A stretch of DNA of 64,000 nt from Diadema antillarum. Its lineage: Eukaryota. The stretch spans positions 248,001 through 312,000 of the forward strand of contig NW_027270977.1 in assembly GCF_040938485.1 (NCBI RefSeq). The letters are read 5' to 3'. Positions within the stretch are counted from its first letter, which is position 1. Every line of letters begins with the position of its first letter. A model generated the notes under the pieces. It was not told the origin of the DNA, ran no database searches, and worked only from the letters and a program-made list of their open reading frames with translations. Below, in pieces: positions 11,628-51,116 of the stretch. A program made the translations under genes and the position numbers.

Positions 11628-11639
11628 TTGGAAAGTTGT

Positions 11640-11810
11640 CCGTCGTATCAACAATCTTTTCACGTGTATGGGACTGAGCACAAGAATTGTTCATTTGTTT
11701 TGTATACGTGTACGTTTACACGACAAACTGCGCCGGTGGATGATGTTCGGCTGGCGTTCGGCTGTGGTGCTGGTGGACTTGCCCGTAAACGTGTCCAATC
11801 TGAGACAATA
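11640..11810 (-). promoter_or_regulatory. Putative BPNT2 5' UTR / proximal promoter
   Basis: CpG-rich stretch immediately 5' of the ATG with a CCAAT near 11796. Confidence 0.45.
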
Positions 11811-13286: not shown

Positions 13287-13428
13287 NNNNNNNNNNNNNN
13301 NNNNNNNNNNNNNNNNNNNNNNNNNNNNNNNNNNNNNNNNNNNNNNNNNNNNNNNNNNNNNNNNNNNNNNNNNNNNNNNNNNNNNNNNNNNNNNNNNNNN
13401 NNNNNNNNNNNNNNNNNNNNNNNNNNNN
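13287..13428. other. Assembly gap
   Basis: Run of N. Confidence 1.
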
Positions 13429-17203: not shown

Positions 17204-17437
17204 TAAATGTCAAACCGCCATAATGTACGCCACAGATGTATTGACCACATAATGTCTACAACTGCTACGTATGTCAGAGAGAAGAAATGATTGTTTCATC
17301 AAAAGTTTTCCATATTATTTTTTATTTTAGCTAGCATCGTCCATCACTAATCTGCATCACTGCTGCCTGGATTGGATCCAAGTGACGGGCAGTGCGAGGA
17401 AAGTTCCGAAAGAACGTGTGACTGCAAGTAGTGCAGG

Positions 17438-17532
17438 ATGCGAGGAAAGGCAAGCTCCTTTGACAGTTCATCTGTCGTCTCTCTTGGGTCAAGAGCTGCT
17501 GGAAACATTTTGATAATTGGAGAAAAACTACG
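17438..17532 (+). CDS. DEPTOR: DEPTOR coding exon 1 (exon probably begins at acceptor 17331)
   Basis: MRGKASSFDSSSVVSLGSRAAGNILIIGEKL-R; donor CG|GTGAGA; upstream TTTTTATTTTAG acceptor implies a non-coding exon further 5'. Confidence 0.85.
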
Positions 17533-20500
17533 GTGAGACCATTTGAGGTTATTATTACAAAGGGATCTACAGTACCGATAAAAATATTTGACTTTCATTT
17601 CTGAAATTCAATAACCCTGCCCCCCCCCCCCCCACAAAAAAAAAAGGTTCAGTTTACATAGTACTAATAACAAATCCAGACGTTAAACCATCATAGCAGG
17701 TTATTCTTTCTTCGAATAAATGAAGGTCACAACTGAAACTTAATGGCATGTTCTGTAAACGTTGTAAATGTACTGCACTTTAATAGTATTAATAATACTT
17801 GTAAGACAATTCATAATAACAAAGGACAAAGGAAAATGAATGGTACTCTGATTTATTTCTAAAAATCAAACGATTGAAATTCTAGAAATGCAAATTTATA
17901 CAGGTCAGAAGGTTAAATGGTATTTCTATGACTGAGTGTAGTCGGTAGAGACAGACACCCTTAAAAATGTGTAATAATATAAAGAGATTTTAGAATTGTT
18001 GACTTGGTTCCAAAGTGGAGATTTTTTACATTAATTTTTTCATCTTTGTACATTGGTCATTGGGGTGAATTTAAAGTTCCAGCTTGGTTGATTTGGGTGA
18101 ATTTAAAGTTGGAAAGGTGTGTGTAACGAAGGCAGTGTTGAGTGAAGGTGAGCAGGTTGTTGTGTGTGCTGAATATCATGAATGATTACACTGACTGCAT
18201 GATTTGATCTGGTTTGTCTTGATAACTCATTGCAGCTGTTCACTGCCCTCCTCGCTGTTGGAAAAACACAAATAATGTACCTGTAGGCCCTATGTGAAAA
18301 AAAAAAGTTTTTACAGGGATGATGTAGTTTTGGTACAGTTTAGAGATGGGAATTCAGATTTAGAATTTTTCGAGAAACCACTTATGAGATATTACAGAGT
18401 ATACCGTTCTAAGAGGAATTCCAAGTTTATTTGATGGAAATTGGTTTTGAAATAGCTGAAATATTCAAAAGAAAGTTAAGCAAAGTGGATGACTAATATA
18501 GTTTAGGAAAAAAAATGCATATGTATATATTCCATTTTTAAAGAAAATGTTGCATTAACATATATATTATGTATATTTAATTATTACCTAAAAGGAAAGT
18601 TCTTTGGTACAAATGTATGTCAGCTTTTCCAATTGTTGTTTATTTCTGAACAGAGGCACAAATCTGATAGTGGGGATCGAATAGAATCCCATAGGAAAGA
18701 AATCAGCCTGCCGCATACTGCTGCGGATGCCTTGCCGCAGATCTGCCGCAGACAGGCATCATTTTCACATGCAAATTAGCTGCTGCCGCAGACTCTTCCA
18801 GGCCAGTGAGGGAGACTGGAGAGTCTGCGGCAGATCTATGCGGCAGACTGTTAATGATGAATATTCATATAAGTACGATTTCAGGAAGAGGTTGTGGCAG
18901 ATCTGCGGCGGGGCAAGTCAGCGGCAAGTCTGCAGCAGACGCCTATTAAATATGTATAGATCTATAGTAAATGACCTAACCTAATCGGCAAGTATGCAGA
19001 TATAGGGCTGCTGCGAGTATTCTAATGCTTAGACTTAGCTTAGCTAGTTCTACATACAATCGCAATGCATCACATGACTTAAATACCCACAAAAAATTGT
19101 TATGTTTTATGGCACGGTTACTAAACTATCTGTGGCAGATCTGCAGCAGATCTGCAGCAGGCTGTTAATGATGAATATTCATAAGTACAATTTCAGGAAG
19201 AGGTTGTGGCAGATCTGCGGCAAGATTTCTACACATGCAGGTATGCAGTATGCGAGAAGTCTGTCGAAAGTTCCTTTCTGTGGCAGCCTTCCCACAGATC
19301 TGCCACAGACTGTTCCTGCTGCATACTAACAGTTAGTATGCGGCAGGTCTGCAGCAAAGCTTGGTTCTGCCGCATACTCCCGCTTACTCTTGCCGCAGAC
19401 TAAAAAGTATGCTGCAGACCGGCGGCAAGTCTGCCGGAGATCTGCGGCAGACTTTTCTTTTTCTTATGGGATGGGCTTAAAATTCACCAAAATTTCCTAG
19501 ATCAGTTCACCCTTTGAAAACAATATTTCTTAAGTTATGAGTATCATGAATATTAGCCAATTAAGAAACGCAAACACAGTATTCCTGGACTTGCAGTGAG
19601 CTACCTGTACAATGGACCTGTATGCTAATGTACATATGTCATACAAATGTAGTATGCTCATGGATGGCATTATAGTGCACAAATAAACAATATTAGTTAC
19701 TCGTTTGGGCAACTCCAAGTTTCTTGTCACTTCAATGTCATACGCTATGTACACCTGTACAATATGTTTTGCGCTGAGGGGTGTGAATACCCTATCACAA
19801 AAGGTCAACCCTGAAGGACGTTACTATCAATGAGTCTTCCTGTGTCAATAAATACTGCCAGTAGCAGTAGGACTGTCTTGCAGCATTAATTGAGTTTAAA
19901 GCAAAGGGGATGCTTACAAAGCTACAGTAGGATCAACCAAAACCCTATCAACTGCCCCCCTTCTGTGTGTATCATATTCTTTAGAAAGATCATATTCAGT
20001 GTAGAAGACAGTGCTTTAGAATATAATTAAGAAATTACATCAGAAGGTGACTTATCATAGTCAAATTGTTCCCGAGACCAAGTCCTACTGGAGTTTTGAA
20101 ATCAAGGACAGGAAAAAGGATTTGAGATTTCACACTTCTGATTTGTTGTTTCATTCATTCATTCCCTTTTAAACTGGTGGTTCTGAACAAATGAAGATTC
20201 TACATCCTACAGTAGTTGTTGTTTTTTTCCCCCACAATGACTCCATTTTGTCTACAAGGTTTATGGATTGCCTGTCAGTGATTTGATTCTTACAATGTAT
20301 TCATCAAGGGATTTGACAAGCTAGTAAATTAGTCATTAAGAACAGCTTTGAGAATAATCCTGTGCTGAAAGATACAATATATGCTTTAAATAGTGCATGA
20401 TGTGCTTTAATAGTGTGTACGTGCTCACCCTGTACACATTTTATTGATTTGTGTTCTTGCTAACAACAGGAGGCAAAGGTTAAGTTCTGAGGATAGTTAA

Positions 20501-23500
20501 CAACACATGTACTTATGTGTGAGTATTTGATCAGCGCATTGCTTGTTTAGAAGCAAGGCCTTCAGGTGAAATCTAGTGGTGAGGTACTATACAAGTATAC
20601 TACAAACCAGTATCTGCAGTTGCAATTGACAAAGGCACACATTGTATCAGATAAGCAGTATTGGGACATCAGTTTACAATATCAGGTCCATGACAAGGAA
20701 TAGCACTGGGGAAGAGGGAAAAACGAGACATCCACAGGACTTTTTCGTTGAAAAACTTGTTCAGTTATTCTAGATGATGGTAATATGAACATATGATGGA
20801 ACAGCAGGAATATGATTGAAGTTTTGTAGACAGTGGATGTAAAAACCTTACCCAGGGAGCCAGGTTACCTTCATCTGTAAACTGTACGTCAGTACAGTGT
20901 GCACTTTTTAGACACTGTTTACACATGAGAGGTATAACACACAAAGCAGCACACAATGAAGGCTGTAAATCCAACTTCTGTGAAAGTTGCATCCAACAGA
21001 AGCTGCCTCCAAAGCTTACATTTCTGTTTAAGAGATCCTCATAGAATTCTGAATGTTTAGAGGCAAAATCCTGGACAAATAAAAGTTATCTAGATAGAAA
21101 TCTTGAGTAAAATCTTACAACAGGGTAGTTTGATCAATACTTAATGGAAATAAAAGAAGTTAAGAAATTGTGAAGTTGATGTCATCCCCTCACAATTTAC
21201 CATTCAGTATTTGTATTAAAATCATATAATTTCCTCCCTTTTCTTTTTCAAAGTATACAATTTTGCCCCAATCTCAAATTCTGAATACCATATGATTGTC
21301 TTACACTTTTAGACCAGAAAAATTAAAGTTTTGTCATTTTTGGTACATGATCAATGGAAAATTATATCTGAATTGATGCATGATGAAATGATGTTTCATA
21401 ATATTCAATTCTGTTTTTTAAAGATTTATTACCATTTTGTCAGGCTCTCTCTGACAATTTGAGAGATATCCAAAAGACACTTTCCCTCATAAAATCTTGT
21501 TTTAAGAAACCACCTTATTGTCTGAGTGCCTGCCGCTGATACATGCTATAATTATGTTTACCAAATCAATTTCTCAAGGCCCGTTTAATTTTGTTTTTTG
21601 AAGATTTATAACCATTTTGTCAAGCTCTCCTCCGATGATGTCAGAGATATTCAAAAGACACTTCATAAAATCTTGTCAAGACACCTCCCTATTGTCTAAG
21701 TGCCGCCGATACATGTTATGATTATGTTTACCAAATCAATTTCTCACGGTCCGTCTGACAGGCACGCACTTTATGCAGCCAATCCATGCATGATCAGGAG
21801 TAGGCGCTATAGACTGCGGTCTTACGCACAGTGCTTTGTTGGCTCCGAGCTGGTGGACTGGCTGATCAAACAGGGGACGATCAAAGATCGCACGACAGCC
21901 AGACAGGCGATGAACGTTCTTCACAAGTACAACGTGATTCACCATGGTAAATGGCCAACTTGTCTCTCTTGTTTTATACACAATCCCCTCATCTTATCGC
22001 CACATTGTCATTATCATTATTATTTTTTTGATATCTCTTGACTTGCTTTTATTGTGTAATTACGAATTACTAGACTGCTTAAAGCCACCATAGGCATGTT
22101 CCACTTTGTGCAGCTAGAACACTATTGTCTAGGCAGCTTGAGTTTTTACAATATGTAACATTCATAGCTATAAACTTTGATTTGACTATTTGATCTGATC
22201 CTGTGTGAGTGTTCTACAATCAACAGAATTCTGTTCAGTATTGTTTGGCACTATAAAGTAATTTTCTCTTGCTTTGTTTAAATGATAATTAATGGAAATT
22301 ACAATGTCCACCTGTTAATGTATGAATTTCAGCAGCAACTCCTTCATGCTCAAAATGGCCAAGATGCAAAATAAACCCCAATATCAATCAGACGGCTACT
22401 CTCCAAACACAAGTGATTATTCCGTAGCTTGCAGTGCATGCAACAGCATCAGGGCAGACAATGATCTACAGTTGTACATACGTACATTGTATCTTCCATC
22501 ATCCGTACTGCAATAGACTCTGTGATTGTTCACGTTCATTACTACAGTATTCATCCATGTGTTCTGCAAAACTTATGAAAGCCAGGGCATACAATGTATC
22601 TAGTACACATAATAGTGTTATGACGAAATGGGAATTATGCCCACTCTGTGCACTTCAATGGCTTCATCTGTTTTAGTTTTAGTTTTTTTGTGTGTGTCAT
22701 CTTTCTTGATTAACAAGGGCTTTGTTTTCATAATGAATTTGCTTGGTTGAAAGTGAAACAAATACTCGTTGCAACTAATGTGCTACCTAGTTATCAATTA
22801 ACCCAGCAAGTTTCGTTGAAGGAGCATTCAAAATGTGGAGGTGTCACATCACTTTGAAAGTTAAGAGGAGTTTTCAAAGGTTCTGGTCTCTGAACACTTC
22901 TTCTCAGATGTCTAAGATCTATAAAGAAGGTATAAAAACAATAACTGTGTATCAATGCATGCTGATGGATGAAGTCACATATGAATCAGTTTTATGAATA
23001 TGAGCATACATCAAATTATATACTGTGTATATGTTTTAAGGACTTTATACTGTATTGAAGATAGTGATAACAGTCCTATTTCTGCTGGACAAATGAACCT
23101 TTACATAAACCATGCCATTCTATCTTTACTGACATCTGTTGATGGTATTATACAGTGCAAGGAATACACTGTATGTTGATTTTTGTCCCCCCCCCCCCCC
23201 CCCCCCCCAGTTCTACTGCTCTGGCGGTCGAGTGTCAGGATCGGCAGTCGTACAAGTTGTATACTATTTGTTTAAACTCTACTTCAACTAGAAATCTGTC
23301 CTAGTTCAAGTTGACCTTTTTTGATATTTAAAGTTTATGATTGGGTGATGAGACATGCAATCTGATTGTCATTAAACTCTTTATGTGCTACATTCGCATG
23401 CCTGAATCAGTTGATGGTGTGCCGAGTTCACGTAATTTGCTCAGACGCATTTTGTAAAGCCACCCAAACTGATTGAGAAATCGACAAATGCCACAGTACA

Positions 23501-26500
23501 ATGAAAGTTTCACTTGTGGTTATGTTCCTCACACATGTAGCTTTCATTGCTTTGTGATTGAATAGTACCATACAAATGTACTTGTTCCACAGGGGATTTC
23601 GAGTTGAAACAAATTCTAGTTTTCTTTCACTGGTGTGTCTGCAAATGCCTTGCCTCCTAGACTTGAACAGTGTGACATACAGTAGCTACTGGCCATCACA
23701 GCAAAGCATGGAATTTTCTCCCAAATTTTGTTCATTGCATGTCTGGCCTGAAAGTTTCTGTGAAAAATGTACAAATCTTTGAGAAATATTATGTTTTCCA
23801 GAAGCACTCATGCGTTGTAGTCTCAGATTGCACAGAATAATGTGGCACACTGGAGGTTTAAGCTTTGGCACATGTACGTAAGTAGAGTTCAACAAACATC
23901 GAAACCAACCTCTGAACATGATGTGAAATTGCACGTTGAATTGTGTAATCGTAATGTTATTTTCTTTTCAAGATTTTACTTATACTTCTCATAAGAGAAA
24001 TATTCAGTAATACCATGCTTTCAACACCCCAAGTCTTTGCGCTATATGTCCATTGTAAATTCATAGCAAAATCCAAGCAGAGTGGGACATACCACTTTTC
24101 ATTAAGAGCATTGGATGCTAAAACACTAAGTCGATTTAAGGACAAATGGCGTTTCAAACCTTGTGTTGCCATTTATATGAATGCAATGTAATAAATTGCT
24201 TGAGTTGTGATTGATGCAATCACGGGGAAAGAGAGAAAGTGAGAGGGAGAAGGTAAAGTCAAATCAAATCAAATCAAATCAAATCAAATCTATAGAAATA
24301 GGAGAGAAAGAAGGAAAAAAGATTGAAGAAGAAGGTTTGAGGAAGGTAAATACATTGTTCTAGTAATTTAAAGGAAAAATGGAAAAACCTCATGAAGAAA
24401 GGCATTTTCTAGTCTTTTGTTAAATAGGAATCAGGTGTGTATCTGTTTGTCTCTTTTTTCCTCCTACGGAACCTCTTGTAAATCTTCAATCAGAGAGATT
24501 TGTTTTGCTATCATTGCATGTACATGTATTTACTGTATGTTTGGGATGCAGGTTGCACAACTCGAAATCAGAAGTTAGAACTTGTTGGTAGCACAAAGAA
24601 TACTTTGAAATTGTTTGAAAATGTATTTGCCTGTAGAAGCACATGTCATGATCAAGTACTTGTTGTCCGTTTTGGCTCAAGTCCAGGGCCTGCTCAAGGG
24701 CATGGGAAGTCCCAGAGTTCTCTGGATGTTCTCTGGATGCTATTTGAGCCTTGTTTTGTTTTGATTTGTTCTTCCCCAACATTTGACCACAGTGATTTGG
24801 CTACGATCCAAAGAATAGAAACTCCACATGAGTGAGGGTGGGGTATTTTTGAAGTCTGCAAACTTTGTTCACTCATGTGCAAGTCTCTTGTAAGCATTAG
24901 CAGGGTGTCAATGCCATCTTTACATTCCATCTGTCCGTCTGTCTGTGTCTGTCTGTCTGTGTCTTTTTCTCTACCTGTCTCTATACTATACGGTTGTATC
25001 TCCCCATGTGACTTATTTGTTTACCTAGTATGTATTCAGTTATCTACCCATGCATATATCTCTAATACCTCCATTCACCCCCGTCTAACTATCTATCTAT
25101 CCATCTATTTTTTCTGCAGTGCAGCTTTTTATACATTTATCTCTTTTGTCATTTTGTCCTTGCATTACAGTCTGTGATGACCATGTCTTTAAGGACGAGA
25201 TACTGTACTACCGATTTCGCGTGGAGGACAACACCTTTGTGGCAACCCGAGAATCCTCGGCTTACTTGCAGGGTACTCAAGTTTTTCAGAGGTGCGCATT
25301 AAGAGCTTGTGGTATTGGCTTCCGTTGGGCTAAGTCTCGATAGCACAAGAAGAATATTATACGTACAATAAAAACTGGTGTTTCATTGCACTTTATAGGT
25401 ACTGTTTACAATTGAGAGTAGTGATTTAAAAAATGTTCGAGTTATCACATTTTATGCATATGTGTAGGTCAGTTGTACCACAGAATATCCTACCATACAA
25501 AATTTTTGCAATAAAGCCTAAAATATAATAAAGGAGATATCAATATTTTTCTCACTAAACCATAACTGCAGACGGTTAAATCTAGAAACAATTTCATTCT
25601 AACTATTTTCACATTTTGTATCTATAGTTGACAATGCTTAACATTGATTATACTGATTATTAACTTTATTACACTGGTTGTTTCTATCTGTAACTCACAT
25701 TTAGGAACTATTTTGAAGCTCGCAAGCTAAGTTTTTGTTTCATCTGTAAATGGTAGACAATGCCTTATGTCTATGGGAATGCAATTTAACAGGATTACTA
25801 CATTTTTGTATCTCATCTTCAGAGATATACAAAAGAAATTTAACACTTTCCAAACTGTAAATGCAAACATTTTGAAGATGCCTATGTGAAGCAAACAAGG
25901 CAATTTGTGAGCAACATCTAAAGCCGCTTTCAGTTTTGCTTCTCATACTCTTCCCCACATTATGTAGCCCAGAAAGAGGAGCCGATCAGTGATGGGGTAG
26001 GATTGTGTGTTGTTGTATCAGGAATTGATCAGATAATGTGACTTTGCATGTCCCTTTATGGCTGCGTTTATCTGACTCGAGAGAGAGAATCACATTTCAA
26101 AATGCATCTGGAATGGTGTTCGCTGCGAAAGTGGTTTGAAACGTGATTTTTCAGGGTGCCGCGTTTATCTAACCATCACCGAATCATGATTCAAGTGTCC
26201 CTGCTCAGCTGCTTTGCATAGTTTGACCCAGGAAGTAGTAATGTAAAATGAGGCCTGTGTTGTAACATGCCGGTTGCATTTACATCATGGACGGTAACCT
26301 TGGCAGCTCAGAGATATAAATGCGTTTCAAAACAGCATTGCGTGTATCTACTCTTAGAAAGCCGATTGTGTCTCAAACGCATTTCAAAACGCCCTTTTGA
26401 ATGGCGTTTCAAATTGGCATTTCTAAACGTGTTTAGAAACACGGTTGCGTTTATCTGTCACCCGTAAATGCCTCAAATGCATTTAGAATCGTGATTCTGC

Positions 26501-29500
26501 CTCAGAAAATTTTGAGATAAACGCACCTCATGTGGCATATTGAAAAGTTATGTGAATTTTCTGCAGCAGTAGATTTGTGAGTGACTATGGTCTTGCCTTT
26601 CTCTGCTGACTTCCTTCCAGGGTGACTACCGAACCCGCTTCACACTCGCTCCTCAAAGTCCACGCAGAGGAAGGACAACAATATGCAAAGGTGAGAGAGA
26701 CCTTACTTCATCTTTGTCACAGACATGATTGTTGGTACAGTGAAAATGGTGCGATAGCATTGAGTGCCGTTCCGCATTCATGAAAAGATAGCTACGTATG
26801 TCCGCAGATCATTTTTTTTGCATTTGTGCACATTCACATTTACTACCTATTTCTATGACCTACTGTCGGTGCATTTCCGTATGTCAGGGAGGGTACATTT
26901 TTTTCCAGCATTGGTGCATGTCAATGATAGCGAACTTGATGCAAAAGGTTAGTCAGAGGATTTGCACTTTTTTTTTCTTTCAGATAAGGTTGGACATGGT
27001 CAAAACAATTATCTAAAACAGCTGTATCAAGGGACTTTTTTTTTTGCTTGTTGAAAGAACAACAACAACAATAATATTTCATAGTTGTTCCGATACATTT
27101 TTTGGCAAAGGGCTTGGCTGATGATTTCTTTTATTTGCCCTTGTACCACAGCACAGTGGGCCAGAATTAGTGCCCAAGCCATCAAAATTAAACAGCACCC
27201 TCTCCAGAGGACTGTTTACAGTTTCAAGGAGTTGCCTGCTGCTGATACGCTGGATCGTGTCATGAACATGGGGCTCATATTGTGTCACAGTGATATGTTC
27301 ATCAAATTGTGGTGCAAGTTTGTTGTTATACAGAGCATGTTTTACTGATTAGATTTCGAAAGAAAGACAAACAGTAAGTCGCAAAGTTGAATGCTGTCCT
27401 TCTACAGTGTCATCCTTGTCCAATCATTCAAGAAGTACTTGACAAAATATCAAGTAGCGCAGATGTGATGTAAAAGAGCAAAGTACTCGATGAAATTAGG
27501 GCATGGTCTAGCTATGAAGGTAAAGATGAAAAAAGAACACAACCCAAACTTGGTGCACTTGGTAGATTCCTCGTGTAACTTTATAGTGTGCACATATTTC
27601 AGATTTTATTGACATTATTTCAGATATAAATGTTGACATTATTTCAGTGATAATGATAAGAAGTGGTCAAAGGGCTCCTTCATGGGATTTGTTTATTATG
27701 GGTCCGGCATGACTTGGCGATTTGATGACATTGGACTTTGGGGCAAATTGTGCTGGAAAGGAATGAAAAATTTTCTTTCTCTTTCGCCATCATGCAATAA
27801 TTCCATAACTGTATCATATGACCAGGCTGCTGACAAGATCATACTTCCCCAACAAAAAAAAAGTATAAATAAAGAGTTGTTGTTTGATTATTTGTAAAGA
27901 CATGTATGTACAGTAGGTACTCTTCATCATAGATAGAGGTTTTCTAAAATAAAACATAATGATGCCTAAGTTGAATGAACACATTAACATGGTATGCTTA
28001 CAAGTGCAAAAGGTTAGCACACTGGATACTACACCTACCCTGTATATCCTAGTATTACAGTAATGATCTACAGTATGTGACATGAATATAATTTTTAACC
28101 CAAAAGTCCATACATGTACGTAGGAAATCCCCCCCCCCCCCCCAAAAAAAAAAAAAAAAGTTTAATGTGCTCCATATTTTGTGGAATGGTATATTTATTT
28201 CAGTGCTGCTGTACAGATTCATGTAGCAAAATATTTCATATGTAATAACATTTTGCTATTCAAGCTACATGTAACATAAGAGTGGTACTTTTCAAGTCTG
28301 TTTTTTGTATGAAATCATTTGATTTAATGTTTTTCCATGCTTTACATACACAACTGTGAAGTAATTTTCAGCAGCTTTTTTTTGCTACACTTAATTTTGC
28401 TTTTGTTAATGTGTGTACAGGAATAGGGGAGACAGATTCTGTATTATGTGAGATCTACAAGTCCTGAGAATATTCGGGCACATGTCTATGTGAAATGCGT
28501 GTTATAGCAAAATCAGTCTGTCCTCAACGGGTTAAAACAAATTTTAACATGTTATGTCTTTCTCTTTCTTTTTTCCCATTGTCCCGACCCACCCACCCAC
28601 CCACCAATCCAACAAAGAGTTTCTATGGAGCTGAACTGGTGTCGTGGCTTCTGAAGTCGGGGTTCTGTCCAAGTAGGGAGAAGGCCCTCGGACTGGGCAA
28701 GGATCTTCTCGAGGCGGACATCATTAGACATGGTAGGAAACTTTGTATCCTCACCCTTTACAAAACAAGCTTTATTGTATTCATATCCCTCCCCCCCTCA
28801 AAAAAAAAAAAAAAGAAAAAAGAAAAGGGAAGAGGAAGCAGAAGAAGAGATGTGGTTATTTGCTGTTTATTTCACCAGTTTACAAGTACTAAATGCATTT
28901 CTTTACATCAAAGTTACAACTGCCTTGCAGTCAAATGGGTTTTAGTTGAGGCCCACTGATAGCAGGTGGGCGGTGCGATGTGTGAAGTCAAAGGTCAAAG
29001 GTCACTGAAAGTCAGCTGAAGTGTCATCTCCCACCTACGGCAATGTATTACTTCTGCGTCCAGTGTTAATATAATTTTTGTATTATGGATAAAGATAAAT
29101 TGAGGCATGTTTTTTTTTTGGGGGGGGGGGGGGAGGAGGTGAAGGGTGGGAGAGGCATAAGGAGAGGGTTAAAGGTCAAATTTAATGATCATTGAACTTT
29201 ATGAAAATGTGATGAAAGGGTGATAATGACAACATGGCAACCCTACCATCCTGGAGATTTTTTCTTTCTCTTTTTCTTTTTTAGTTGCAGAATATGTTAA
29301 AAAGTATCCCTCCCCCGTTACAATTATTTCATTACTTTTTCTTTTATATATTGTGAATTTCAATCCTCTTCACAAGATTAGTGAACCAGAGGTACCCTTC
29401 CAAAACTGATGTGAAAATCTGTCTTTGATAAATTATGCATACTGGTATATATGTGCAGACTGAACCAGCTATTTACATCTGTACATGTAGCTCTGTACAA

Positions 29501-31128
29501 TGTACATCTACTGAAGTCGGACAGTACATGTATGATGAGTAGAACCCATGTATTCAACTTCCTTCTGTACGCTCAGTAAGACAGTCATTCAATTAGGACA
29601 AAGGTCTTCATCCACCTCTCCCGCTTTGTCCAAATCCAGCTGTCCCGATCTTTGCAGTCAGTCGGCAAACGCACAGCAACACTGCCACATTTTCTTCTTT
29701 TTGTTTTCTTTTTTTTGAGCAAACATAAGCCCACCAGCCAGTGCACATGTCCAACTACTACTGTACCTTCACACAAAACACACACCACCTCGTAAGAACA
29801 CACACAAAATAAAATGTGCTATGCTTAGCACTATTTCTCCAGTGTACACAAAAGGGGGTGCAGTGTACACACAAATAGAACAGCATGGCATGCCCAGTAG
29901 AGCCACACACTGTACAGCTAAAGGGAGGTGTCTCACTTCCCTGAATGCTGCTATGCAAAGATGGCATAATGGCCAACTCAAACCAAACCTAATGCAAATA
30001 CATTTACACCTGCACTGGGACTGCACATACTTGCAATGTGCTGTACTTCCTACGTAATCTTCCACATACTCTAAATCCACATGACATGTACAGTACACTG
30101 TGTGTAAATGTACAGCAAATGTGTGTCTAAAATGTATTCAACACTCTTTGCATGTTGCCATGAGTATTGGTTTCAAAGCATGAGGCACCTGCTATGATGT
30201 TGTGCACACTTTGTACATCATACAAAGCAAGAGGGGGAACCTGGAAAAATACCTGTACATCGACATACTCAATTTTTGTAGTTACTCTACTAACAAAAAT
30301 GAAGAAAAAGAAATGGACAGCGGTATTGATATGTAAAAACTGACCACGATGCCTCTGCCGGCTACGGCTACTGTTTGAAGAAATTACGGCCTCCTAAAAC
30401 TGACTCAGATTGGACAATCAAAGAGTAAAACCTTTTATGACATGCAGTGTATGAATTATGCTTGAGTTGCTGATTTGTACTCAATAGGCGTTTTCACATC
30501 AGCCCGATGTTTCGAAATAGCACGCTATTTTCTGACTTGGGAAATTTTCCCGAAAGCGAAATAGCGCGCTATTTGATAATGTGAACACAAATTAGCGCGC
30601 TAATTGTATCGCTCTGATCAAGAAAATTTCTCGACTCCAACTCGGGAAATTTCTGAAATAGCGGGATAGTATCGCGCTATTTGATAATGTGAAAACAACA
30701 CAAGAAATTAGCGCGATGAATCCCATCATGCTTAGCGTGTGTGACCCGATCGATCGAGGCAAACTGCACACAAATCATGAGGAATTTTTGAGAGGGCACA
30801 CACATTACTGATGCTGTTTACACATACTCAGCTGTTGAATTAGCTATTTTAAAATTGTTAACTATTCGGGCTACCCCCTCTTCGGGCTGATGTGAATAAG
30901 AAATGAAATAGCGCTCTAATTCGCAATCGCGGAAAATATTTTGAGCTTGGATTTTTATCGGGCTGATGTGAAAAGGCCTAATGTGACTGGGAGCCTGAAT
31001 GGCATGGTAATTTTGCTAGTTTCATACTCTTGGAAGATCACCCAGAAGGGTATAGAAAGGACGTCGACAAAGCTATTTTTTTTTTTACTTTTGCCTTCCT
31101 ACCTTCTCAGCATGTGACTCTCTCTCTC

Positions 31129-31162
<34 letters not shown>

Positions 31163-34100
31163 CAGTCACCATGGATCATCACTTCAAGGACGAGCGGATG
31201 CTCTACCAGTTCAACCCCATCATGGGGGACCTGGGGGTCGGCGACCTCTTGACCCTTGACCAGGAGGCGGGGTGCAGTTCATCAGGCGAGGCCTCAATGC
31301 TGTCTCTGGCGGTACCCAAAGACGTGACCCGGAAGCACTCGAGCTCTTCCTCTTCAGGTGAATTCTTTTTGTTTCTTTTACCTCTGCCAAGGGGGGAGGT
31401 TATGTTTTCATTACCGTTGGTTTGTTTATTTGTTGGTAGTGGGCACGCCGTCTCCCGACCAGGTCGGGCAGTGCGCCGTCATGTGTCTGCTGTTTACTGC
31501 GTTAATGCGGACCTAGTTGGCTTCACGCCATGTCCCAGGACGGGCCAGGTAGTGCACCATCCTGTGTCTGTTGGTTGCTGTCCCGGCAGTTTAAAAAATA
31601 TCTGACATGGCACCCACAGCAATCATGGCCTTTCATGTTTGCTCATCACATCCCCCCACATTGTCTTATATTCATCCCGTTTTGTCCAAGTTAGCCTGGA
31701 AACAGGACTGCCGTAGCCGCCGGGAATATTGTGTAAACGCAGCGTCAATAAACAAACTATCAAAAATTTCCCCTCCCCTTCAGCCATATGTAGCCCCCTT
31801 TTAGATTTTTTTGTACAGCATTATATCCAAGAAGTGCTGTTCATTTACCTACCGGGGTTAAATTACACTACATTTGCATATATCTGAACAGAAAGTGAAT
31901 CTTTTCACTACATGTTGTATGTTTGATTGATGTACTGGAAATATGTTCCTGTCACAAAATCAACTTGAAAAGAATTATACCAAGGGTTTATTTTTATTAA
32001 AGACTAATTTTTGATCACTCAATATTCCTCTTTTTAATTCACATCATCAGACTCGTCGGCAGACAAGAGCTCTCTCAGTGGCTCCAAGCCAGACATCAGT
32101 ACTCCAGACCAGAACCAAAACAGAGTGGTGGAGGAGCGGCTGCGGAGGGTGTCCTCCGACCTGGAGAGCCCGGACACGCCCACCTCCAGGGCCTTCCTGC
32201 CCGGGTGTGGGCAGGGTTCGTTTTCGGCAGATGAGCTGAGGCAGCCTGACAGCCCTTTTCTGAAGCAGGACATTAAGGTTATTACCCCTTCCCCTGTTAC
32301 ACCTCCTCCATTTTGTCTATTCAAAATAATGGTTCTTGCGTTAAGTTGTTTCTATTGCTATTGGTTGACAAATTTGAATGGCCATTTGTCAATCAGTCAA
32401 TCCATCAATCAAATTAACCTGTTCCTTCCGCAATTCTCTGAGTGCCTTTAATGCCCCCAAACGAGATTCTTTTCGCCCGTCGACAGAGAGGCACATAGGT
32501 TGGTAATCCAGCTGTGTGAAGGCAGTCAAGCGGTTCATTGTGTCCCCATTTCTACGGTCAACTACATGTGCCCGTGAACAATGGAAATATCGATCGGGTG
32601 CGAGGTATGAATAGAGCGTGCGCTGATGAGCTCTCAGAATCTTTTGTTCTACACAAAACAAGGTACTTGAATGAGTGACTGGGGTCAGCGAATCCGCATT
32701 TCTAACTGATTTCAGCCTTGATCATTATGTACATGTTCGTACGAGTTTACAGCAGAACAAGCAAAAAACTAAATCAGGAAAAGGTACATAATACTGTAAA
32801 ACCCCCTTTTTTTAAACAGCAGGAGAACAAATCCTGATAGAATAAACTCTGATCTTTTTATCAAACCCACTTTTTTGAGCATTTTAACACAAAGAAACAT
32901 GAATTTAGGCCACTGAAGCAGGCACCCTTGTCTTCATTAAACCAGGTTCCCGTATATCAGTTGCTCCCACGGGAACCTGGTAAACCAGGTTCCCGTAAGG
33001 AACGGGTTAAAACAGCTTGACGGAAAAATCATTCATTGGAATTAATGTGCAGTATCCACTGCTATAAGGCGTCAGAAGCATCACTGGCTATGGGCAAAAG
33101 TTCAATAGTCTAGTGGACATGATGCCTGTCTAGCAATCAGGAGTTCATTGGTATGAGTCCGACCCTTGTATGTATTACCATTGGATTTTTATCATGGCTA
33201 AAACTGAAACACTGAATAGTGATTTGTATTTATGCGATTAAGAGCAATGTGTCAATCAGTTTGAATTCCAAATTTTCTGTTTTGCAGTTCGTACATGTCT
33301 TTTTTTGACCTTAACTCATACTCTCTGCCATCATTAAAGTAGACATTCAAAGAGATCAATAAATTCTGCAATTTAGGAATCATTAGAAAGCTCCGAAGAC
33401 ATAGAAGGCAATGGAATTTTGTTACCTCGCTTTCGCGTTGCTAGAAAGAAGTAAACGCTCACGAAAAACTGCGGTTTTCTGGAGCCTGATAAGGGCCAAT
33501 TCGTCAGGAAAGATACCCGTTTCGCCTGACGTCATGCACTGGATTTGCGGACTCTGCCCGGTGAATGTGTGTACAATGTTAACGGAGGTACAACCTGATT
33601 CCTTTGCATTTTATTTCCTTATGTAAAAGTCGAATTGAATGAAATATAACTTTTCATGGTTTAATAGTAACGAAGAAACATTTCTCTCTCGATTTTTTTG
33701 TAATTCTTACAGATATTTTCGTCAATATTCAGGAATTCAAGCTACTTAGGTAATCTTATTTTTCTTATGTTTGTAATGTTACCGCGTTCAAGTTTCGCTG
33801 GTCATATAAAGCGTTTAATTGGAAATCATGAGGATGTCCGTGACAGGATTGATAATCTAAGACATGGTGATGTTGACAATAACAAGCAGACTTACGAAAA
33901 ATGGCGAAATATCAAAATAGGAGAGATTTTAAAACGAGGATCGAGACAACTTGTGCAGCCCAGTCTCGTAGCTCGCGATCGCTCGCATGCAATTACATGT
34001 ATGTACTTGTATTAATCCGCGGTGAAGTGGCTCTGCTGCTCCGATCCGTATTGGTAGCCGCTCGCCGCACCACCATCCTCACTGCCTGCGTGCCTGGCCT

Positions 34101-35248: not shown

Positions 35249-35291
<43 letters not shown>

Positions 35292-38200: not shown

Positions 38201-40508
38201 TGAAAGAAATCTCTTTTATGCGCCGCTAGCATTCACAAATTTCATACTTTATGAGGATGAAATGTAAGGAAAAACTCTGAACTACAAGGAGACATGCAAG
38301 AAAACTGCTAATAAACTAAATAATTGGACTTGCTAGGCTCCTAAACACAACACTGAAAACAATTCACGGTAGCAGTCTATGGAGCGAACGTGTATTTTCA
38401 GAGTACGAATCCAGTGCGTGACGTCATCTGGAAGGGGTATCGGCAGACCGTTCATCGGGGCATTTCGGGTTCACTTTTTCGCCCGATTTCAATAATTAAT
38501 AAAAAATAGTTGGGATTGTTCTTTTCTCTCGATATTTTGTGTACACCTAGGACAGATGTTCAAATTCAATATTTTCTTATCAAATTTGTGTTTCATGCTC
38601 TTTGAATTTCTACTTGAAAAACCATGACCCCATATTTCATCAACTGCACATCCTTACCTATCATCAGGAGTATCTGTATTCATATTCTGGGTCTGATTTC
38701 GCCACATTTTACTATCAACCGATATAGTCACTGGTGCGTATCTATCCATTTTTGCGCCTCCGTCCCGAAGGATGGTGGCTTAATCATGTTTCAGGTCTGT
38801 CCAGCGGGATAGTGGTGTCAAGATTTCATGAAAGTCTGATACTCCTTTCAAAAATCTGATTTTTAGCTCACCTGAGCCAAATGTTCAAGTGGAGGGGGGG
38901 GGGGGAGGAGGAGAGTTGCAACTCATTTTCCTCATCTTCTTGAAAACACATGGTCAAATTTGTCACCAAACCCAGTTCATTATTACAAGGGTGACATTTT
39001 ATGTACTTATAACAAGGTCCACAGAACCCCCTATTTCAAAAAAGAAAAAATATCATTTCTAACTGAAAATACTCTACTCTTGAGTAAATACACGTACATT
39101 AGTGAATGCACTTTCAAGGTTATTTATAGTAGATTCAGGGGTTGGGCAGGGACCGAATTGGGTGGGGGGGGGGGCAATTTTTACATTAATTTTTCTTTTT
39201 CTTGAACTGCATAGTTAGATTTTGTATATAGAGTGTACTTGGCAGGTATTTTTATCAGTGTGATGGAATATGCTAGTGGACACCATGTCCCCATAGAGGC
39301 CCTCAAAGCTCTGTTTGTTTTTTATGTCAAGAAGTTGGCATCTCTGATTATGTCATCACTTGATGAGAAAGCCAAGGGGCAAATCGTCATTCTCCTTTTA
39401 AAATGCTTGTCCTAAACCGTTCATACTCCCTCATGCAGATAAACGGAGACTCTGTAGGCTTTGGCCTGGTAATACGAGGCAGCGGCCCAACTTATGTCCA
39501 GACTGTTGACCCCAAGGGACCAGCAGCAGCCGCTGGACTAAGGGTAAATACATTGCCATTGACTTCTCAAAAAAAGAAAAAGAGAAAAGTCCTTCCAAAC
39601 CAAGATTCTGGCAGCGACATCATCTGTAAATCATTGCTGAAGTATTAATATGATTAAAGGGTGTGTACAGTTCTGGTCGAGGTGAAGATTTAGCTTTTAA
39701 CGTTAGGTGAGATATTCAGAAAACACTCTATGAGATGTTAAAGAGCATGCAGTTCTAAGGGGCATCAAAAGTTTATTCGATGAAAATCGGTTTTGAAATG
39801 GCTGAGATATCCAAAAGCAATGTGAAACAAAGAGATCCTAATAAAGTTGTGTTATGTCGCCTTTTATTATTAGCACTTTTTTGGATATCTCAGCCATTTG
39901 AAAACCAATTTTCATCAAATAAACGTTGAATCCTTCTTAAAATTACATGCTCTTTCATATTTCATAACAGGCTTTTCATTATCTCACTTAGGAATGTTCA
40001 AAACATGAATCCCTACCTCAACCAGTACTGTACAGTCCCTTTAACAAAAGACATGAGAATACACCTTTTTCTAGGCCAAGTATAACTTGCATGCTTCCAT
40101 GCAGTGTCTGTTGTTGATCAGGTTAATACTTTCAATGATTTACATGTGATGTCACTGGCAGACTCTTGGTGCAGAAAGTTTTTTGATAATAAGAAAGTTT
40201 TTTGTGGGTATATCCAAGTAATCTGAAGGAAAAAAAAAGTGGAAAAAAATTATTACAAAACATATGGCACATATTTAGACATTCTTTTGGCTACATAAGG
40301 GATTTTGAGGGTATCATGAATCAGCACAAGCCAAAATGTATAGCATTTCCATTGTTCCTTTAACATGCATTTGCATTGCATAGTTCCTTTAATTCACTGA
40401 AAATTTTTCCTCATTCTCACTAAGTCAAAAAATTTCTTTTCAGTAGACATTCATTATTTTGCTGTCAATCATTTGTTTATTACTACAGAACAATTCTTTT
40501 GTTTCTAC

Positions 40509-40544
<36 letters not shown>

Positions 40545-40753
40545 TGGACTCTCCTTCCTACCTTTTTATATGTGTAATGTGTCCTTTTGCGTCCTTTGTC
40601 GGGAAACAGGTCAGACAGTACATCTCCAGTGTGAATGGTGTGGACGTCCTGGACAAGAACCACACCGATGTGGCCAAGCTGATCCTGGCCAACCCCTTCG
40701 AGCTCTCGCTGGTGGTTCTCAAGCTCCGGGATGACATGCCGCTGATGGTGTGA
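17438..40753 (+). CDS. DEPTOR: DEP domain-containing mTOR-interacting protein (DEP-DEP-linker-PDZ); join(17438-17532, 21762-21946, 25171-25291, 26621-26690, 28618-28732, 31166-31357, 32051-32277, 39439-39543, 40610-40753), ~417 aa
   Basis: GNILIIGEKLR resembles human AEVLVTGEQLR. DEP1 runs from CFVGSELVDWL to YYRF; DEP2 runs from SFYGAELVSWLL to LYQF. A Ser-rich linker follows, then a PDZ domain (INGDSVGFGLVIRGSGPTYVQTVDPKGPAAAAGLRVRQYISSVNG). All introns are GT-AG with phases 2,1,2,0,1,1,0,0; total 1254 nt is in frame. An in-frame TAG at 17429 lies just upstream of the ATG. Confidence 0.92.
18315..18490. mobile_element. Kolobok-like MITE, left-half fragment
   Basis: GAGAAACCACTTATGAGATA...GAGGAATTCCAAGTTTATTTGATGGAAATTGGTTTTGAAATAGCTG matches the family; a shorter fragment lies at ~11020-11100. 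Confidence 0.6.
18688..19470. mobile_element. CACTA/EnSpm-like MITE (CCC...GGG ends, AT on both flanks) with many subterminal TGCCGCAG / GCAGATCTGC repeats
   Basis: CCCATAGGAAAGAAA / TTTCTTTTTCTTATGGG termini; internal ~60 bp direct repeat at ~18850 and ~19163; superfamily assignment is inference. Confidence 0.75.
21413..21755. repeat. Tandem duplication, ~180 bp period, ending at the DEPTOR exon acceptor
   Basis: Copies start at ~21413 and ~21593 (GTTTTTT.AAGATTTAT.ACCATTTTGTCA...TTTACCAAATCAATTTCTCA). Confidence 0.85.
21762..21946 (+). CDS. DEPTOR: DEPTOR exon, DEP1 core
   Basis: TGACAG acceptor; HALYAANP...CFVGSELVDWL...VIHH; donor G|GTAAAT. Confidence 0.93.
23400..23560 (-). pseudogene. 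Possible highly decayed non-LTR (RTE-like) reverse transcriptase fragment
   Basis: Broken frames give CEEHNH..VAFVDF (23477-23494) and KLRELGTP (23415-23435), reminiscent of the RT region around the FVDFxKAFD motif; weak. Confidence 0.22.
25171..25291 (+). CDS. DEPTOR: DEPTOR exon, DEP1 C-terminal part
   Basis: TTACAG acceptor; VCDDHVFKDEILYYRFRVEDNTF...GTQVFQR; donor AG|GTGCGC. Confidence 0.9.
26061..26527. mobile_element. MITE with GCGTTTATCT / AGATAAACGC ends and internal AAA(T/C)GC(G/A)TTT repeats
   Basis: Short TIRs visible; TSD unclear. Confidence 0.55.
26621..26690 (+). CDS. DEPTOR: DEPTOR exon, DEP2 N-terminal part
   Basis: TTCCTTCCAG acceptor; VTTEPASHSLLKVHAEEGQQYAK (human LLQPREEEGVKYER); donor AAG|GTGAGA. 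Confidence 0.88.
28456..28535. mobile_element. Inverted partial copy of the ~90 bp mini-MITE
   Basis: Reverse complement begins TTAACCCGTTGAGGACAGACTGATTTTGCTATAACACGCATTTCACATAGAC, matching 8956-9010. Confidence 0.6.
28618..28732 (+). CDS. DEPTOR: DEPTOR exon, DEP2 core
   Basis: SFYGAELVSWLLKSGFCPSREKALGLGKDLLEADIIRH; atypical AAAG acceptor; donor G|GTAGGA. Confidence 0.88.
30486..30979. mobile_element. PIF/Harbinger-like MITE (~490 bp)
   Basis: TIRs AGGCGTTTTCACATCAGCCCGAT / ATCGGGCTGATGTGAAAAGGCCT; 3 bp AAT duplication; repeated AAATAGCGCGCTATTT palindromes. Confidence 0.85.
31166..31357 (+). CDS. DEPTOR: DEPTOR exon, DEP2 end and linker
   Basis: (CT)n-CCAG acceptor; VTMDHHFKDERMLYQF...KHSSSSSS; donor G|GTGAAT. 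Confidence 0.92.
32051..32277 (+). CDS. DEPTOR: DEPTOR exon, Ser-rich linker
   Basis: CATCAG acceptor; DSSADK...RRVSSDLESPDTP...FSADELRQPDSPFLKQDIK (human VTSEELLTPGAPYARKTFT); donor AAG|GTTATT. Confidence 0.85.
33100..33170 (+). mobile_element. Degenerate tRNA-derived SINE head
   Basis: A-box-like TAGTCTAGTGG (33106) and B-box-like GGTATGAGTCC (33150) at tRNA-like spacing; no intact cloverleaf seen. Confidence 0.35.
35450..36480. repeat. Degenerate repeat region rich in TTCGGA(A/T)TAACGAAC-like motifs in both orientations
   Basis: Many diverged motif copies; ends not resolved; probably an old DNA transposon. Confidence 0.35.
36730..37610. repeat. Tandem array of ~12 degenerate 71 bp units
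   Basis: Unit starts at ~36859, 36931, 37002, 37073, 37144, 37221, 37292, 37363, 37434, 37505; consensus like ATGAATAACAATAATATTCGGCTCCG..GATGCTAAAATAAATGTCGGATGTTTGCTTT.ACGTTCGGAA. Confidence 0.9.
39439..39543 (+). CDS. DEPTOR: DEPTOR exon, PDZ N-terminal half
   Basis: 105 nt, phase 0-0; INGDSVGFGLVIRGSGPTYVQTVDPKGPAAAAGLR. Confidence 0.93.
39654..40044. mobile_element. Kolobok-like MITE (TTAA|AGGG...CCCT|TTAA), full copy in DEPTOR intron 8
   Basis: ~33 bp imperfect TIRs; TTAA target; long internal inverted repeat (GATGAAAATCGGTTTTGAAATGGCTGAGATATCCAAAA and its complement). Confidence 0.85.
40610..40753 (+). CDS. DEPTOR: DEPTOR terminal coding exon, PDZ C-terminal half
   Basis: AAACAG acceptor; VRQYISSVNGVDVLDKNHTDVAKLILANPFELSLVVLK...MV*. 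Confidence 0.92.
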   Translation, partial: VRQYISSVNGVDVLDKNHTDVAKLILANPFELSLVVLKLRDDMPLMV

Positions 40754-50979: not shown

Positions 50980-51116
50980 NNNNNNNNNNNNNNNNNNNNN
51001 NNNNNNNNNNNNNNNNNNNNNNNNNNNNNNNNNNNNNNNNNNNNNNNNNNNNNNNNNNNNNNNNNNNNNNNNNNNNNNNNNNNNNNNNNNNNNNNNNNNN
51101 NNNNNNNNNNNNNNNN
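50980..51116. other. Assembly gap
   Basis: Run of N. Confidence 1.

What the first reader, a model, noticed from the sequence alone, without database searches (positions are those of the whole stretch)
17438..40753. Complete DEP-DEP-PDZ DEPTOR in what looks like an invertebrate genome
Seen: a fully spliceable 417 aa DEP-DEP-Ser linker-PDZ gene, bounded by an upstream in-frame stop and a stop right after the single PDZ. Known: DEPTOR, an mTORC1/2 inhibitor, was originally described as vertebrate-restricted and is not reported in the standard fly, worm and yeast models. Inference: the host is an echinoderm, and several intron positions (after GEKLR, after IIHH, the 105 nt PDZ exon) match the human structure as I recall it. 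That would date a full DEPTOR-mTOR module to at least the deuterostome ancestor.
Basis: partly seen in the sequence, partly recalled or inferred. Interest (0 to 1): 0.7.

Follow-up and report, generated by a model that had tools for sequence, protein, structure and literature searches.

The report
Sea urchin DEPTOR gene, already annotated
The window holds a complete, selectively maintained nine-exon DEPTOR gene of the sea urchin Diadema antillarum. DEPTOR is therefore not vertebrate-only, but public annotation and a 2024 mollusc paper already show this, so the finding is correct and not new.

Summary
Nine + strand exons (17438-40753), all with AG/GT splice sites, splice into a 417-aa DEP-DEP-linker-PDZ protein. 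[quoted passage not shown]

It is a true DEPTOR orthologue:
- It aligns end to end with human DEPTOR (E 1.9e-62). PREX1 matches only over the DEP pair (E 1.8e-34).
- Its tree follows the species tree.
- Six of its eight introns share position and phase with herring DEPTOR, and five with a coral. The PDZ exon is 105 nt in all seven lineages mapped.
- dN/dS against D. setosum is 0.033.

DEPTOR-named orthologues are already annotated in all five echinoderm classes and in a hemichordate, amphioxus, molluscs, a brachiopod, nemerteans, a tardigrade and corals. A 2024 paper describes scallop DEPTOR. The "vertebrate-specific" label persists only in reviews and structural papers.

mTOR binding remains inferred. 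No RNA runs were listed.

The parts
17429..17431 (+). In-frame TAG stop two codons upstream of the start codon
   Evidence: Read directly in the sequence.
17438..17532 (+). Exon 1 (95 nt): ATG and the N-terminal 31 2/3 codons, ending in GEKLR. The donor is GT, phase 2.
   Evidence: The start MRGKA.SFD is conserved in S. purpuratus. The intron position and phase are shared with starfish, amphioxus, herring and limpet.
21762..21946 (+). Exon 2 (185 nt): core of DEP domain 1, ending in VIHH. Phase-1 intron.
   Evidence: Pfam DEP E 3.4e-15. The best PDB match is human DEPTOR. The intron is shared by all seven species mapped.
25171..25291 (+). Exon 3 (121 nt): end of DEP1 and the inter-DEP helix. 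Phase-2 intron.
   Evidence: The intron is shared by all seven species.
26621..26690 (+). Exon 4 (70 nt): start of DEP2. It is followed by a phase-0 intron found only in echinoderms.
   Evidence: The intron is present in Diadema, S. purpuratus and Asterias. It is absent in amphioxus, herring, limpet and coral.
28618..28732 (+). Exon 5 (115 nt): core of DEP2, ending in IIRH. Phase-1 intron.
   Evidence: Pfam DEP E 1.4e-08. The intron is shared by all seven species.
31166..31357 (+). Exon 6 (192 nt): end of DEP2, the helix after DEP2 and the first half of the Ser-rich linker.
   Evidence: In the AF2 model the helix spans 220-232, followed by pLDDT below 50.
32051..32277 (+). Exon 7 (227 nt): second half of the disordered linker plus the N-terminal extension of the PDZ (ELRQPDSPF).
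   Evidence: In non-echinoderms this stretch is split by a further phase-1 intron that sets off a 71-nt exon.
39439..39543 (+). Exon 8 (105 nt): first half of the PDZ. It carries both segments equivalent to the human residues that contact the mTOR FAT domain (DSVGFGL at 339-345, TVDPKGPAA at 357-365).
   Evidence: Human DEPTOR is by far the best PDB match (2.1e-09; the next hit is 1.4e-03). The exon is 105 nt with phase 0 on both sides in all seven species. Mean identity is 72% across 36 orthologues. The contact residues are given in PMC8439657.
40610..40753 (+). Exon 9 (144 nt including the TGA stop at 40751-40753): second half of the PDZ and a 7-residue tail.

Best explanation
This is the single-copy DEPTOR orthologue of the sea urchin Diadema antillarum, an intact gene under purifying selection. 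By homology, its product most likely acts as in mammals. The C-terminal PDZ and its short N-terminal extension would anchor it to the FAT domain of TOR. The tandem DEP module and the disordered Ser-rich linker would then dampen TORC1/TORC2 kinase activity, as a partial inhibitor that is also a substrate. Shown here: gene structure, identity, orthology, selection, fold, and conservation of the FAT-contact segments. Inferred: TOR binding, inhibition and phosphoregulation. Turnover control through the mammalian beta-TrCP degron probably does not apply in the same form.
For: - Exact identity to RefSeq DEPTOR-like of D. antillarum, with the same gene range in record JBFRCO010000089.1.
- Full-length colinear match to human DEPTOR: 215 bits, E 1.9e-62, residues 21-407 against 30-404. 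PREX1/2 match only over the DEP pair, at E 1.8e-34 and 6.1e-31.
- Fold search on the AF2 model: the top hit is DEPTOR bound to mTORC2 (7pe9_I). The DEP tandem matches 7dkl at TM 0.82 and 2.5 A, and the PDZ matches 7owg_O at TM 0.87 and 1.5 A.
- ML tree of 36 proteins: the urchin clade has support 100/100, echinoderms 100/99 and bilaterians 97/93, with corals outside and a PREX-like outgroup. The topology mirrors the species tree.
- Six of eight introns are shared in position and phase with herring and five with a coral.
- dN/dS is 0.033 against D. setosum.
- The PDZ residues equivalent to human 336-342 and 354-362, which contact mTOR FAT (PMC8439657), fall on invariant or near-invariant columns: D339, V341, G342, G344, D359, P360, G362, P363, A364, A365.
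- There is no DH or PH coding potential anywhere upstream in the window.
Against: - No transcript evidence for Diadema could be obtained. No RNA run was listed, so the junctions rest on canonical splice sites, the RefSeq model and conservation.
- TOR binding and inhibition were not tested.
- The linker motif that sits in a FAT groove in human (residues 304-308, CNPKS; PMC8439649) is recognisable in herring, limpet and coral but diverged in echinoderms.
- The human SSGYFS degron has no counterpart at the aligned position. The only SSGxxS in Diadema (234-239) lies elsewhere and is absent from other urchins.
- The DSCC1 neighbour seen in starfish and amphioxus is not in this window.
Confidence: 0.93

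Rival explanations
1. The exons are the DEP-DEP-PDZ middle of a P-Rex-type Rac exchange factor, or of another DEP-family gene, whose DH-PH exons lie upstream.
For: PREX1/2 are the next-best PDB matches over the DEP pair. For the short DEP2 exon alone, PREX1 has the higher summed score. An AG at 17434-17435 lies between the upstream stop and the ATG, so an upstream exon could in principle splice in.
Against: - tblastn with the DH-PH part of a PREX-like protein finds nothing on the + strand of the window.
- The 5.7 kb upstream ends at a divergently transcribed inositol-phosphatase-family gene.
- The N-terminus is conserved with S. purpuratus.
- The PDZ exon matches only DEPTOR strongly.
- The protein ends after one PDZ.
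- The tree and the introns group it with DEPTOR.
Confidence: 0.02
2. It is a genuine DEPTOR orthologue by descent, but in echinoderms it no longer regulates TOR, or does so differently. It might act as a phosphatidic-acid or membrane adaptor, or through its free PDZ peptide groove.
For: The FAT-groove linker motif is diverged and the human-type degron is absent at the aligned site. The canonical PDZ peptide groove is unoccupied in the human complex and could serve other partners (PMC8439649). There are no functional data for any echinoderm.
Against: The FAT-contact segments of the PDZ are the most conserved part of the protein from corals to mammals. The DEP tandem is also well conserved, at about 51-53% mean identity, and selection is strong. 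This pattern fits a conserved partner surface.
Confidence: 0.12
3. It is an unexpressed or decaying gene copy, a mis-assembled duplicate rather than the functional locus.
For: The same assembly holds a second copy on another contig (P0228, 418 aa). No RNA evidence was obtained here.
Against: The reading frame is intact, all splice sites are canonical, and dN/dS against D. setosum is 0.033. The upstream neighbour is the same as in S. purpuratus. The other copy is 90-97% identical through the introns as well, as expected of the second haplotype in a highly heterozygous urchin.
Confidence: 0.03

Closest known systems
Human/vertebrate DEPTOR (DEPDC6; PDB 7OWG, 7PE7-7PED, 7DKL)
   Same: - The same architecture and length (417 against 409 aa): tandem DEP, disordered Ser/Thr-rich linker, and a single C-terminal PDZ with an N-terminal extension.
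- A colinear alignment at E 1.9e-62 and matching folds.
- Six shared intron positions and phases with herring.
- Conserved FAT-contact segments in the PDZ.
   Different: - About 36% overall identity.
- No SSGYFS degron at the aligned site, and the CNPKS-like linker motif is diverged.
- One extra intron in DEP2 and one fewer before the PDZ.
- The upstream neighbour is a BPNT2-like gene. In human the flanking genes include DSCC1 (PMC7188784).
- Function is untested.
Scallop AiDEPTOR and other annotated invertebrate DEPTORs (PMC11591371, 2024)
   Same: [quoted passage not shown] The window protein sits in one clade with the orthologues of other molluscs, a brachiopod, a nemertean, a tardigrade, corals, a hemichordate and amphioxus; the scallop protein itself was not in the tree.
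   Different: It belongs to a different phylum. The scallop gene has expression data across stages, tissues and heat stress. The Diadema gene has none here.
P-Rex1/P-Rex2 (PREX1/2) DEP-DEP-PDZ-PDZ region
   Same: A tandem DEP pair followed by a PDZ. It is the second-best PDB match over the DEP pair (E 1.8e-34).
   Different: PREX proteins are about 1600 aa, with N-terminal DH-PH, two PDZ domains and a C-terminal IP4P-like domain. None of these is encoded here. The PDZ exon shows no significant similarity to PREX PDZ domains.

Membership tests
DEPTOR | Two tandem DEP domains at the N-terminus | tested here: met
   Pfam DEP, two stretches, E 5.2e-38. The model matches the DEPTOR DEP tandem 7dkl at TM 0.82 and 2.5 A over 208 columns.
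DEPTOR | A single PDZ at the C-terminus, with the protein ending just after it | tested here: met
   PDZ_6 at residues 355-407. The stop comes seven residues after the last strand. Match to 7owg_O at TM 0.87 and 1.5 A.
DEPTOR | A long disordered Ser/Thr-rich linker between DEP2 and the PDZ | tested here: met
   pLDDT below 50 for 236-314. The linker has 21 Ser in 81 residues, 31% Ser+Thr, and three SP/TP sites.
DEPTOR | No catalytic or additional domains (no DH-PH, second PDZ or IP4P) | tested here: met
   Pfam finds only DEP and PDZ. There is no DH-PH similarity in the window.
DEPTOR | Orthology: closer to vertebrate DEPTOR than to any other DEP protein, with a gene tree that follows the species tree | tested here: met
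   PDB search and ML tree. Caveat: the outgroup is one PREX-like protein, because animal PREX sequences could not be brought in as ids.
DEPTOR | Intron positions and phases shared with vertebrate DEPTOR | tested here: met
   Six of eight are shared with herring. The 105-nt PDZ exon is identical in length in seven lineages. Skipping of human exons for residues 42-142 corresponds to window exons 2 and 3 (PMC5237168).
DEPTOR | Conserved PDZ surface that contacts the mTOR FAT domain (human 336-342, 354-362) | tested here: met
   Diadema has DSVGFGL and TVDPKGPAA. Most of these columns are invariant or at least 90% conserved in 36 orthologues. The contact residues come from PMC8439657.
DEPTOR | Beta-TrCP phosphodegron SSGYFS in the linker (a mammalian feature) | tested here: not met
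   No [DES]SGxx[ST] at the aligned position in any echinoderm. SSGEAS at 234-239 occurs only in the two Diadema species and lies elsewhere. The pattern is also missing from herring and lamprey and is present in four of the five corals in the alignment, so it does not define the family.
DEPTOR | Head-to-head microsynteny with DSCC1 | tested here: not met
   A Dcc1 gene lies upstream on the opposite strand in Asterias and amphioxus, and DSCC1 flanks DEPTOR in human (PMC7188784). There is no Dcc1 in this window. In urchins the neighbour is an Inositol_P-family gene.
DEPTOR | Physical binding to TOR and partial inhibition of TORC1/TORC2 | not testable with these tools
   This needs biochemistry.
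P-Rex (PREX1/2) | N-terminal DH-PH Rac-GEF module upstream of the DEP pair | tested here: not met
   tblastn with a DH-PH query finds nothing on the + strand. The ATG is preceded by an in-frame stop, and the start is conserved with S. purpuratus.
P-Rex (PREX1/2) | Two PDZ domains and a long IP4P-like C-terminus | tested here: not met
   One PDZ and then a stop.

The most novel reading that the evidence does not exclude
DEPTOR may be an ancestral TOR regulator of eumetazoans, and possibly older. It would then have been lost in flies, nematodes and other lineages, and would work in echinoderms without the mammalian beta-TrCP degron. Two DEP-DEP-PDZ proteins from uncultured, intron-poor eukaryotes (JGI metagenome contigs) branch below corals in the tree. 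If they are not fast-evolving animals, the module predates Eumetazoa.
Probability: 0.3. Interest if true: 0.4.

Novelty: already known. Interest (0 to 1): 0.22.

Why it matters
Influential reviews and the 2021 cryo-EM papers still call DEPTOR "vertebrate-specific" (PMC5237168, PMC8439649). This locus and its annotated relatives show that label is wrong. The gene, its exon structure and its TOR-contact surface go back at least to the cnidarian-bilaterian ancestor, so its absence from flies and worms is a loss. In practice, DEPTOR biology could be studied in sea urchin embryos and other tractable invertebrates. The point is already visible in RefSeq and UniProt annotation and in a 2024 mollusc paper, so it is a correction of a habit in the literature, not a discovery.

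Tried and rejected
- **RNA evidence.** The look-up of sequencing runs listed no RNA run for 28400-32400 and its cap is one call. Read laying was therefore not used, and the junctions have no direct transcript support.
- **Spliced protein in search tools.** The spliced protein has no window reference, and I did not type it into any tool. Single exons were searched by reference until the identical RefSeq protein P0152 turned up. From then on P0152 stood for the model.
- **PREX outgroup.** A word search with the DEP-DEP-PDZ region of the PREX-like protein P0137 returned only itself and an unrelated ATPase. Animal PREX1/2 could therefore not be put in the tree. The PREX comparison rests on the PDB sequence and fold searches and on the single PREX-like outgroup.
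- **Big representative search.** With the 61-aa DEP1 exon it was topped by multi-DEP proteins of unrelated architecture (AAA ATPase, RapGAP, kinases). The DEPTOR-like hits had to be picked out by full-length BLAST.
- **Profile word search.** The listed top 120 of 294 hits were almost all vertebrates, so it added little on deep taxa.
- **Taxon of the two deep-branching JGI proteins.** The question is unresolved.
- **DSCC1 synteny.** tblastx of the starfish and amphioxus flanks found nothing in the window.
- **Montipora locus.** It was not on record. Desmophyllum was used as the coral.
- **Possibly human-derived proteins.** P0025 (ENA, 409 aa, on a 1.3-kb contig) and P0245 may come from human. 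I left them out of the alignments and the tree and did not pursue their contigs.
- **N runs.** The N runs at 13287-13428 and 50980-51116 were left as they are.


Full report
**What is there.** The window is AT-rich eukaryotic DNA (GC 0.33-0.43) with two short N runs outside the gene. Reading the + strand between 17.4 and 40.8 kb, I assembled nine exons whose introns all begin GT and end AG. The exons are 17438-17532, 21762-21946, 25171-25291, 26621-26690, 28618-28732, 31166-31357, 32051-32277, 39439-39543 and 40610-40753. The ATG is preceded by an in-frame TAG at 17429-17431, and the TGA comes seven residues after the PDZ. Exon by exon, Pfam sees DEP in exons 2 and 5 and weak PDZ signal in exons 8 and 9. 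On the whole protein it sees two DEP domains (E 5.2e-38) and one PDZ.

**Whose gene it is.** A search with the DEP1 exon against the representative library, followed by BLAST of my model against the hits, singled out P0031, a 414-aa protein 63% identical over the full length. [quoted passage not shown] P0152 is identical to my model at all 417 positions. Its gene lies on JBFRCO010000089.1 of assembly GCA_040938485.1 and spans 23,316 bp, the same as 17438-40753. The host is therefore the long-spined sea urchin. This agrees with earlier notes of this scan on other pieces of the genome. From this point P0152 stood for the spliced model in all tools.

**Is it DEPTOR or something else with DEP and PDZ domains?** Five tests agree that it is DEPTOR.

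- *Sequence against solved structures.* P0152 aligns colinearly with human DEPTOR from residue 21 to 407 (215 bits, E 1.9e-62). PREX1 and PREX2 match only over the DEP pair, at E 1.8e-34 and 6.1e-31. The 35-residue PDZ exon alone hits human DEPTOR at 2.1e-09, and the next PDZ scores 1.4e-03.
- *Fold.* An AlphaFold2 model built on 36 orthologues has pLDDT of 86 or more in nearly all 10-residue blocks of the DEP tandem (21-230) and the PDZ (321-410). pLDDT is below 50 across the linker 236-314. Its best PDB matches are DEPTOR bound to mTORC2 (7pe9_I), the DEPTOR DEP tandem (7dkl, TM 0.82, 2.5 A) and the DEPTOR PDZ (7owg_O, TM 0.87, 1.5 A).
- *Tree.* An ML tree of 35 DEP-DEP-PDZ proteins and a PREX-like outgroup (RhoGEF-PH-DEP-DEP-PDZ) puts the window protein with the other sea urchins (100/100). 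These sit inside echinoderms (100/99), with the crinoid basal, starfish grouped with brittle stars, and sea cucumbers grouped with urchins. Bilaterians are supported at 97/93 and corals fall outside them. A gene tree that follows the species tree is what one-to-one orthology predicts.
- *Gene structure.* I mapped exact exon coordinates for Diadema, S. purpuratus, Asterias, Branchiostoma lanceolatum, herring, the limpet Patella and the coral Desmophyllum and projected the introns onto an alignment. Five introns are shared in position and phase by all seven: after IHH (phase 1), between the DEP domains (phase 2), after IIRH (phase 1), and on both sides of the PDZ exon (phase 0). The intron after GEKLR (phase 2) is shared by all but the coral. 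The PDZ exon is exactly 105 nt in all seven. A review states that human isoform 2 lacks two in-frame exons encoding residues 42-142 (PMC5237168). With the numbering of the human alignment, these boundaries coincide with window exons 2 and 3. No human genomic sequence was used.
- *No upstream GEF module.* tblastn with the DH-PH part of the PREX-like protein finds nothing on the + strand. The 5.7 kb upstream ends at a divergent inositol-monophosphatase-family gene. The N-terminus MRGKA.SFD is conserved in S. purpuratus.

**Is it functional?** Against the D. setosum orthologue (L008) there are 58 synonymous and 7 non-synonymous differences, giving dS 0.22, dN 0.007 and dN/dS 0.033. I could get no RNA evidence for Diadema, because none was listed. 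The orthologue P0031 is encoded whole on a 2.4-kb Logan contig, which suggests an intron-free transcript in a related urchin.

**How it probably works.** The human structures show three things. The PDZ core binds the FAT domain of mTOR in a non-canonical way. A short stretch of linker (residues 304-325) extends that interface. The DEP tandem binds a second FAT site and mediates partial, allosteric inhibition, while the long linker is an mTOR substrate that also touches the FRB (PMC8439649; PMC8439657). Heimhalt et al. name DEPTOR residues 336-342 and 354-362 as the key FAT contacts.

In Diadema these segments are DSVGFGL (339-345) and TVDPKGPAA (357-365). Both are encoded by the 105-nt exon. 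They fall on the invariant or near-invariant columns of the 36-sequence alignment (D339, V341, G342, G344, D359, P360, G362, P363, A364, A365). That exon averages 72% identity to the Diadema protein across the alignment. The whole PDZ averages 59%, the DEP domains 51-53% and the linker 23%. The PDZ extension motif EL..P..P[FY] is also kept. The simplest reading is that the partner surface, and hence TOR binding, is conserved. I rate this about 0.7, and it is inferred, not shown.

Two features differ from the human protein. The human linker motif CNPKS(V) (residues 304-308 are CNPKS), which sits in a FAT groove, is recognisable in herring, limpet (EPKSV) and coral (PRPV) but not in echinoderms. 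The human phosphodegron SSGYFS also has no counterpart at the aligned site in any echinoderm. The only SSGxxS in Diadema (234-239) lies just after the DEP tandem and is absent from other urchins. The pattern is present in four of the five corals in the alignment (at roughly the corresponding place in the one coral I aligned with herring) and is missing from herring and lamprey, so it does not define the family.

**Lineage-specific details.** Echinoderms have gained a phase-0 intron inside DEP2, between window exons 4 and 5. They have lost the phase-1 intron that sets off a 71-nt exon before the PDZ exon in amphioxus, herring, limpet and coral. In Asterias and amphioxus the upstream, divergently oriented neighbour is a Dcc1 (DSCC1) gene. 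In human, DSCC1 and COL14A1 are the genes listed beside DEPTOR at 8q24.12 (PMC7188784). In Diadema and S. purpuratus the neighbour is instead an Inositol_P-family (BPNT2-like) gene, and no Dcc1 is found in the window.

**What is already known.** Peterson-era statements that DEPTOR exists only in vertebrates are still repeated (PMC5237168 in 2017; PMC6118303 in 2018; the abstract of PMC8439649 in 2021). Public annotation, however, already names DEPTOR orthologues in the following groups:

- sea urchins, starfish, a brittle star, sea cucumbers and crinoids
- Saccoglossus and Branchiostoma
- limpet, chiton and bivalves
- Lingula and nemerteans
- a tardigrade
- several corals

A 2024 paper identifies a 9-exon, 392-aa DEP-DEP-PDZ DEPTOR in the bay scallop and reports expression data. 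The species it lists for its phylogeny of the five TORC1 subunits include S. purpuratus, Acanthaster, Saccoglossus and a soft coral; I did not read the table that says which subunit came from which species (PMC11591371). I found no paper that studies an echinoderm DEPTOR itself. As a finding it is already known.

**Limits.**
- Animal PREX sequences could not be obtained as ids, so the tree has a single PREX-like outgroup.
- There was no RNA evidence.
- The TOR side of the interface was not examined.
- Two metagenomic DEP-DEP-PDZ proteins that branch below corals remain without a taxon.

Noticed in passing
window 7091-11681 (- strand): A multi-exon gene of the inositol monophosphatase family (Pfam Inositol_P in four ORF pieces). 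Its first exon opens with a hydrophobic stretch that I read by eye as a likely membrane anchor, so it looks like BPNT2/IMPAD1. It is transcribed divergently from DEPTOR, with about 5.7 kb between the two start codons. The same neighbour (357-358 aa) sits upstream of DEPTOR in S. purpuratus. In starfish and amphioxus the upstream neighbour is Dcc1 instead.
   Followed up: partly
L009 (D. antillarum contig JBFRCO010001333.1), compared with window 17438-40753: The assembly holds a second DEPTOR copy (P0228, 418 aa). It has three substitutions and one extra residue at the exon 6/7 junction, where the acceptor CATCAG reads CATTAG. DNA identity is 90-97% through the introns, so it is most likely the other haplotype of a heterozygous individual and not a paralogue.
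   Followed up: partly
L011:217-1434 and L010:2770-3756 (JGI metagenome contigs): DEP-DEP-PDZ proteins P0171 and P0173 branch below corals in the DEPTOR tree. P0171 is an uninterrupted 405-codon ORF next to an equally intron-free RAD23-like gene. P0173 lies beside SH3-SH2-tyrosine-kinase genes. Their organism is unknown. They could be fast-evolving animals or a sign that the family is older than Eumetazoa.
   Followed up: partly
window 36782-37551 (intron 7 of DEPTOR): A tandem array with a 71-bp unit (also read as a 142-bp unit), about 10 copies at 72% match. It produces a ladder of similar spurious ORFs on the minus strand.
   Followed up: partly
window 61984-63213 (+ strand): An intron-free 409-codon ORF for a rhodopsin-family GPCR (Pfam 7tm_1, E 3e-44), about 21 kb downstream of DEPTOR.
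   Followed up: partly
window 55320-56580 (- strand): A fragment of a non-LTR retrotransposon. One 202-aa ORF carries a reverse transcriptase domain (RVT_1, E 5.5e-27), and an adjacent 172-aa ORF has no Pfam match.
   Followed up: partly
A1 alignment; coral sequences P0028, P0161, P0160, P0164: Four of the five corals in the alignment carry SSGS[LPS]S in the linker, a few residues before the PRPV motif. In the one coral aligned with herring this is roughly where mammals have the SSGYFS degron. Herring, lamprey and all echinoderms lack such a pattern. It is unclear whether this reflects an ancient degron or chance in a Ser-rich linker.
   Followed up: no
window 13287-13428 and 50980-51116: Two runs of N, which are assembly gaps or masked stretches. 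Both lie outside the DEPTOR gene and were left untouched.
   Followed up: no
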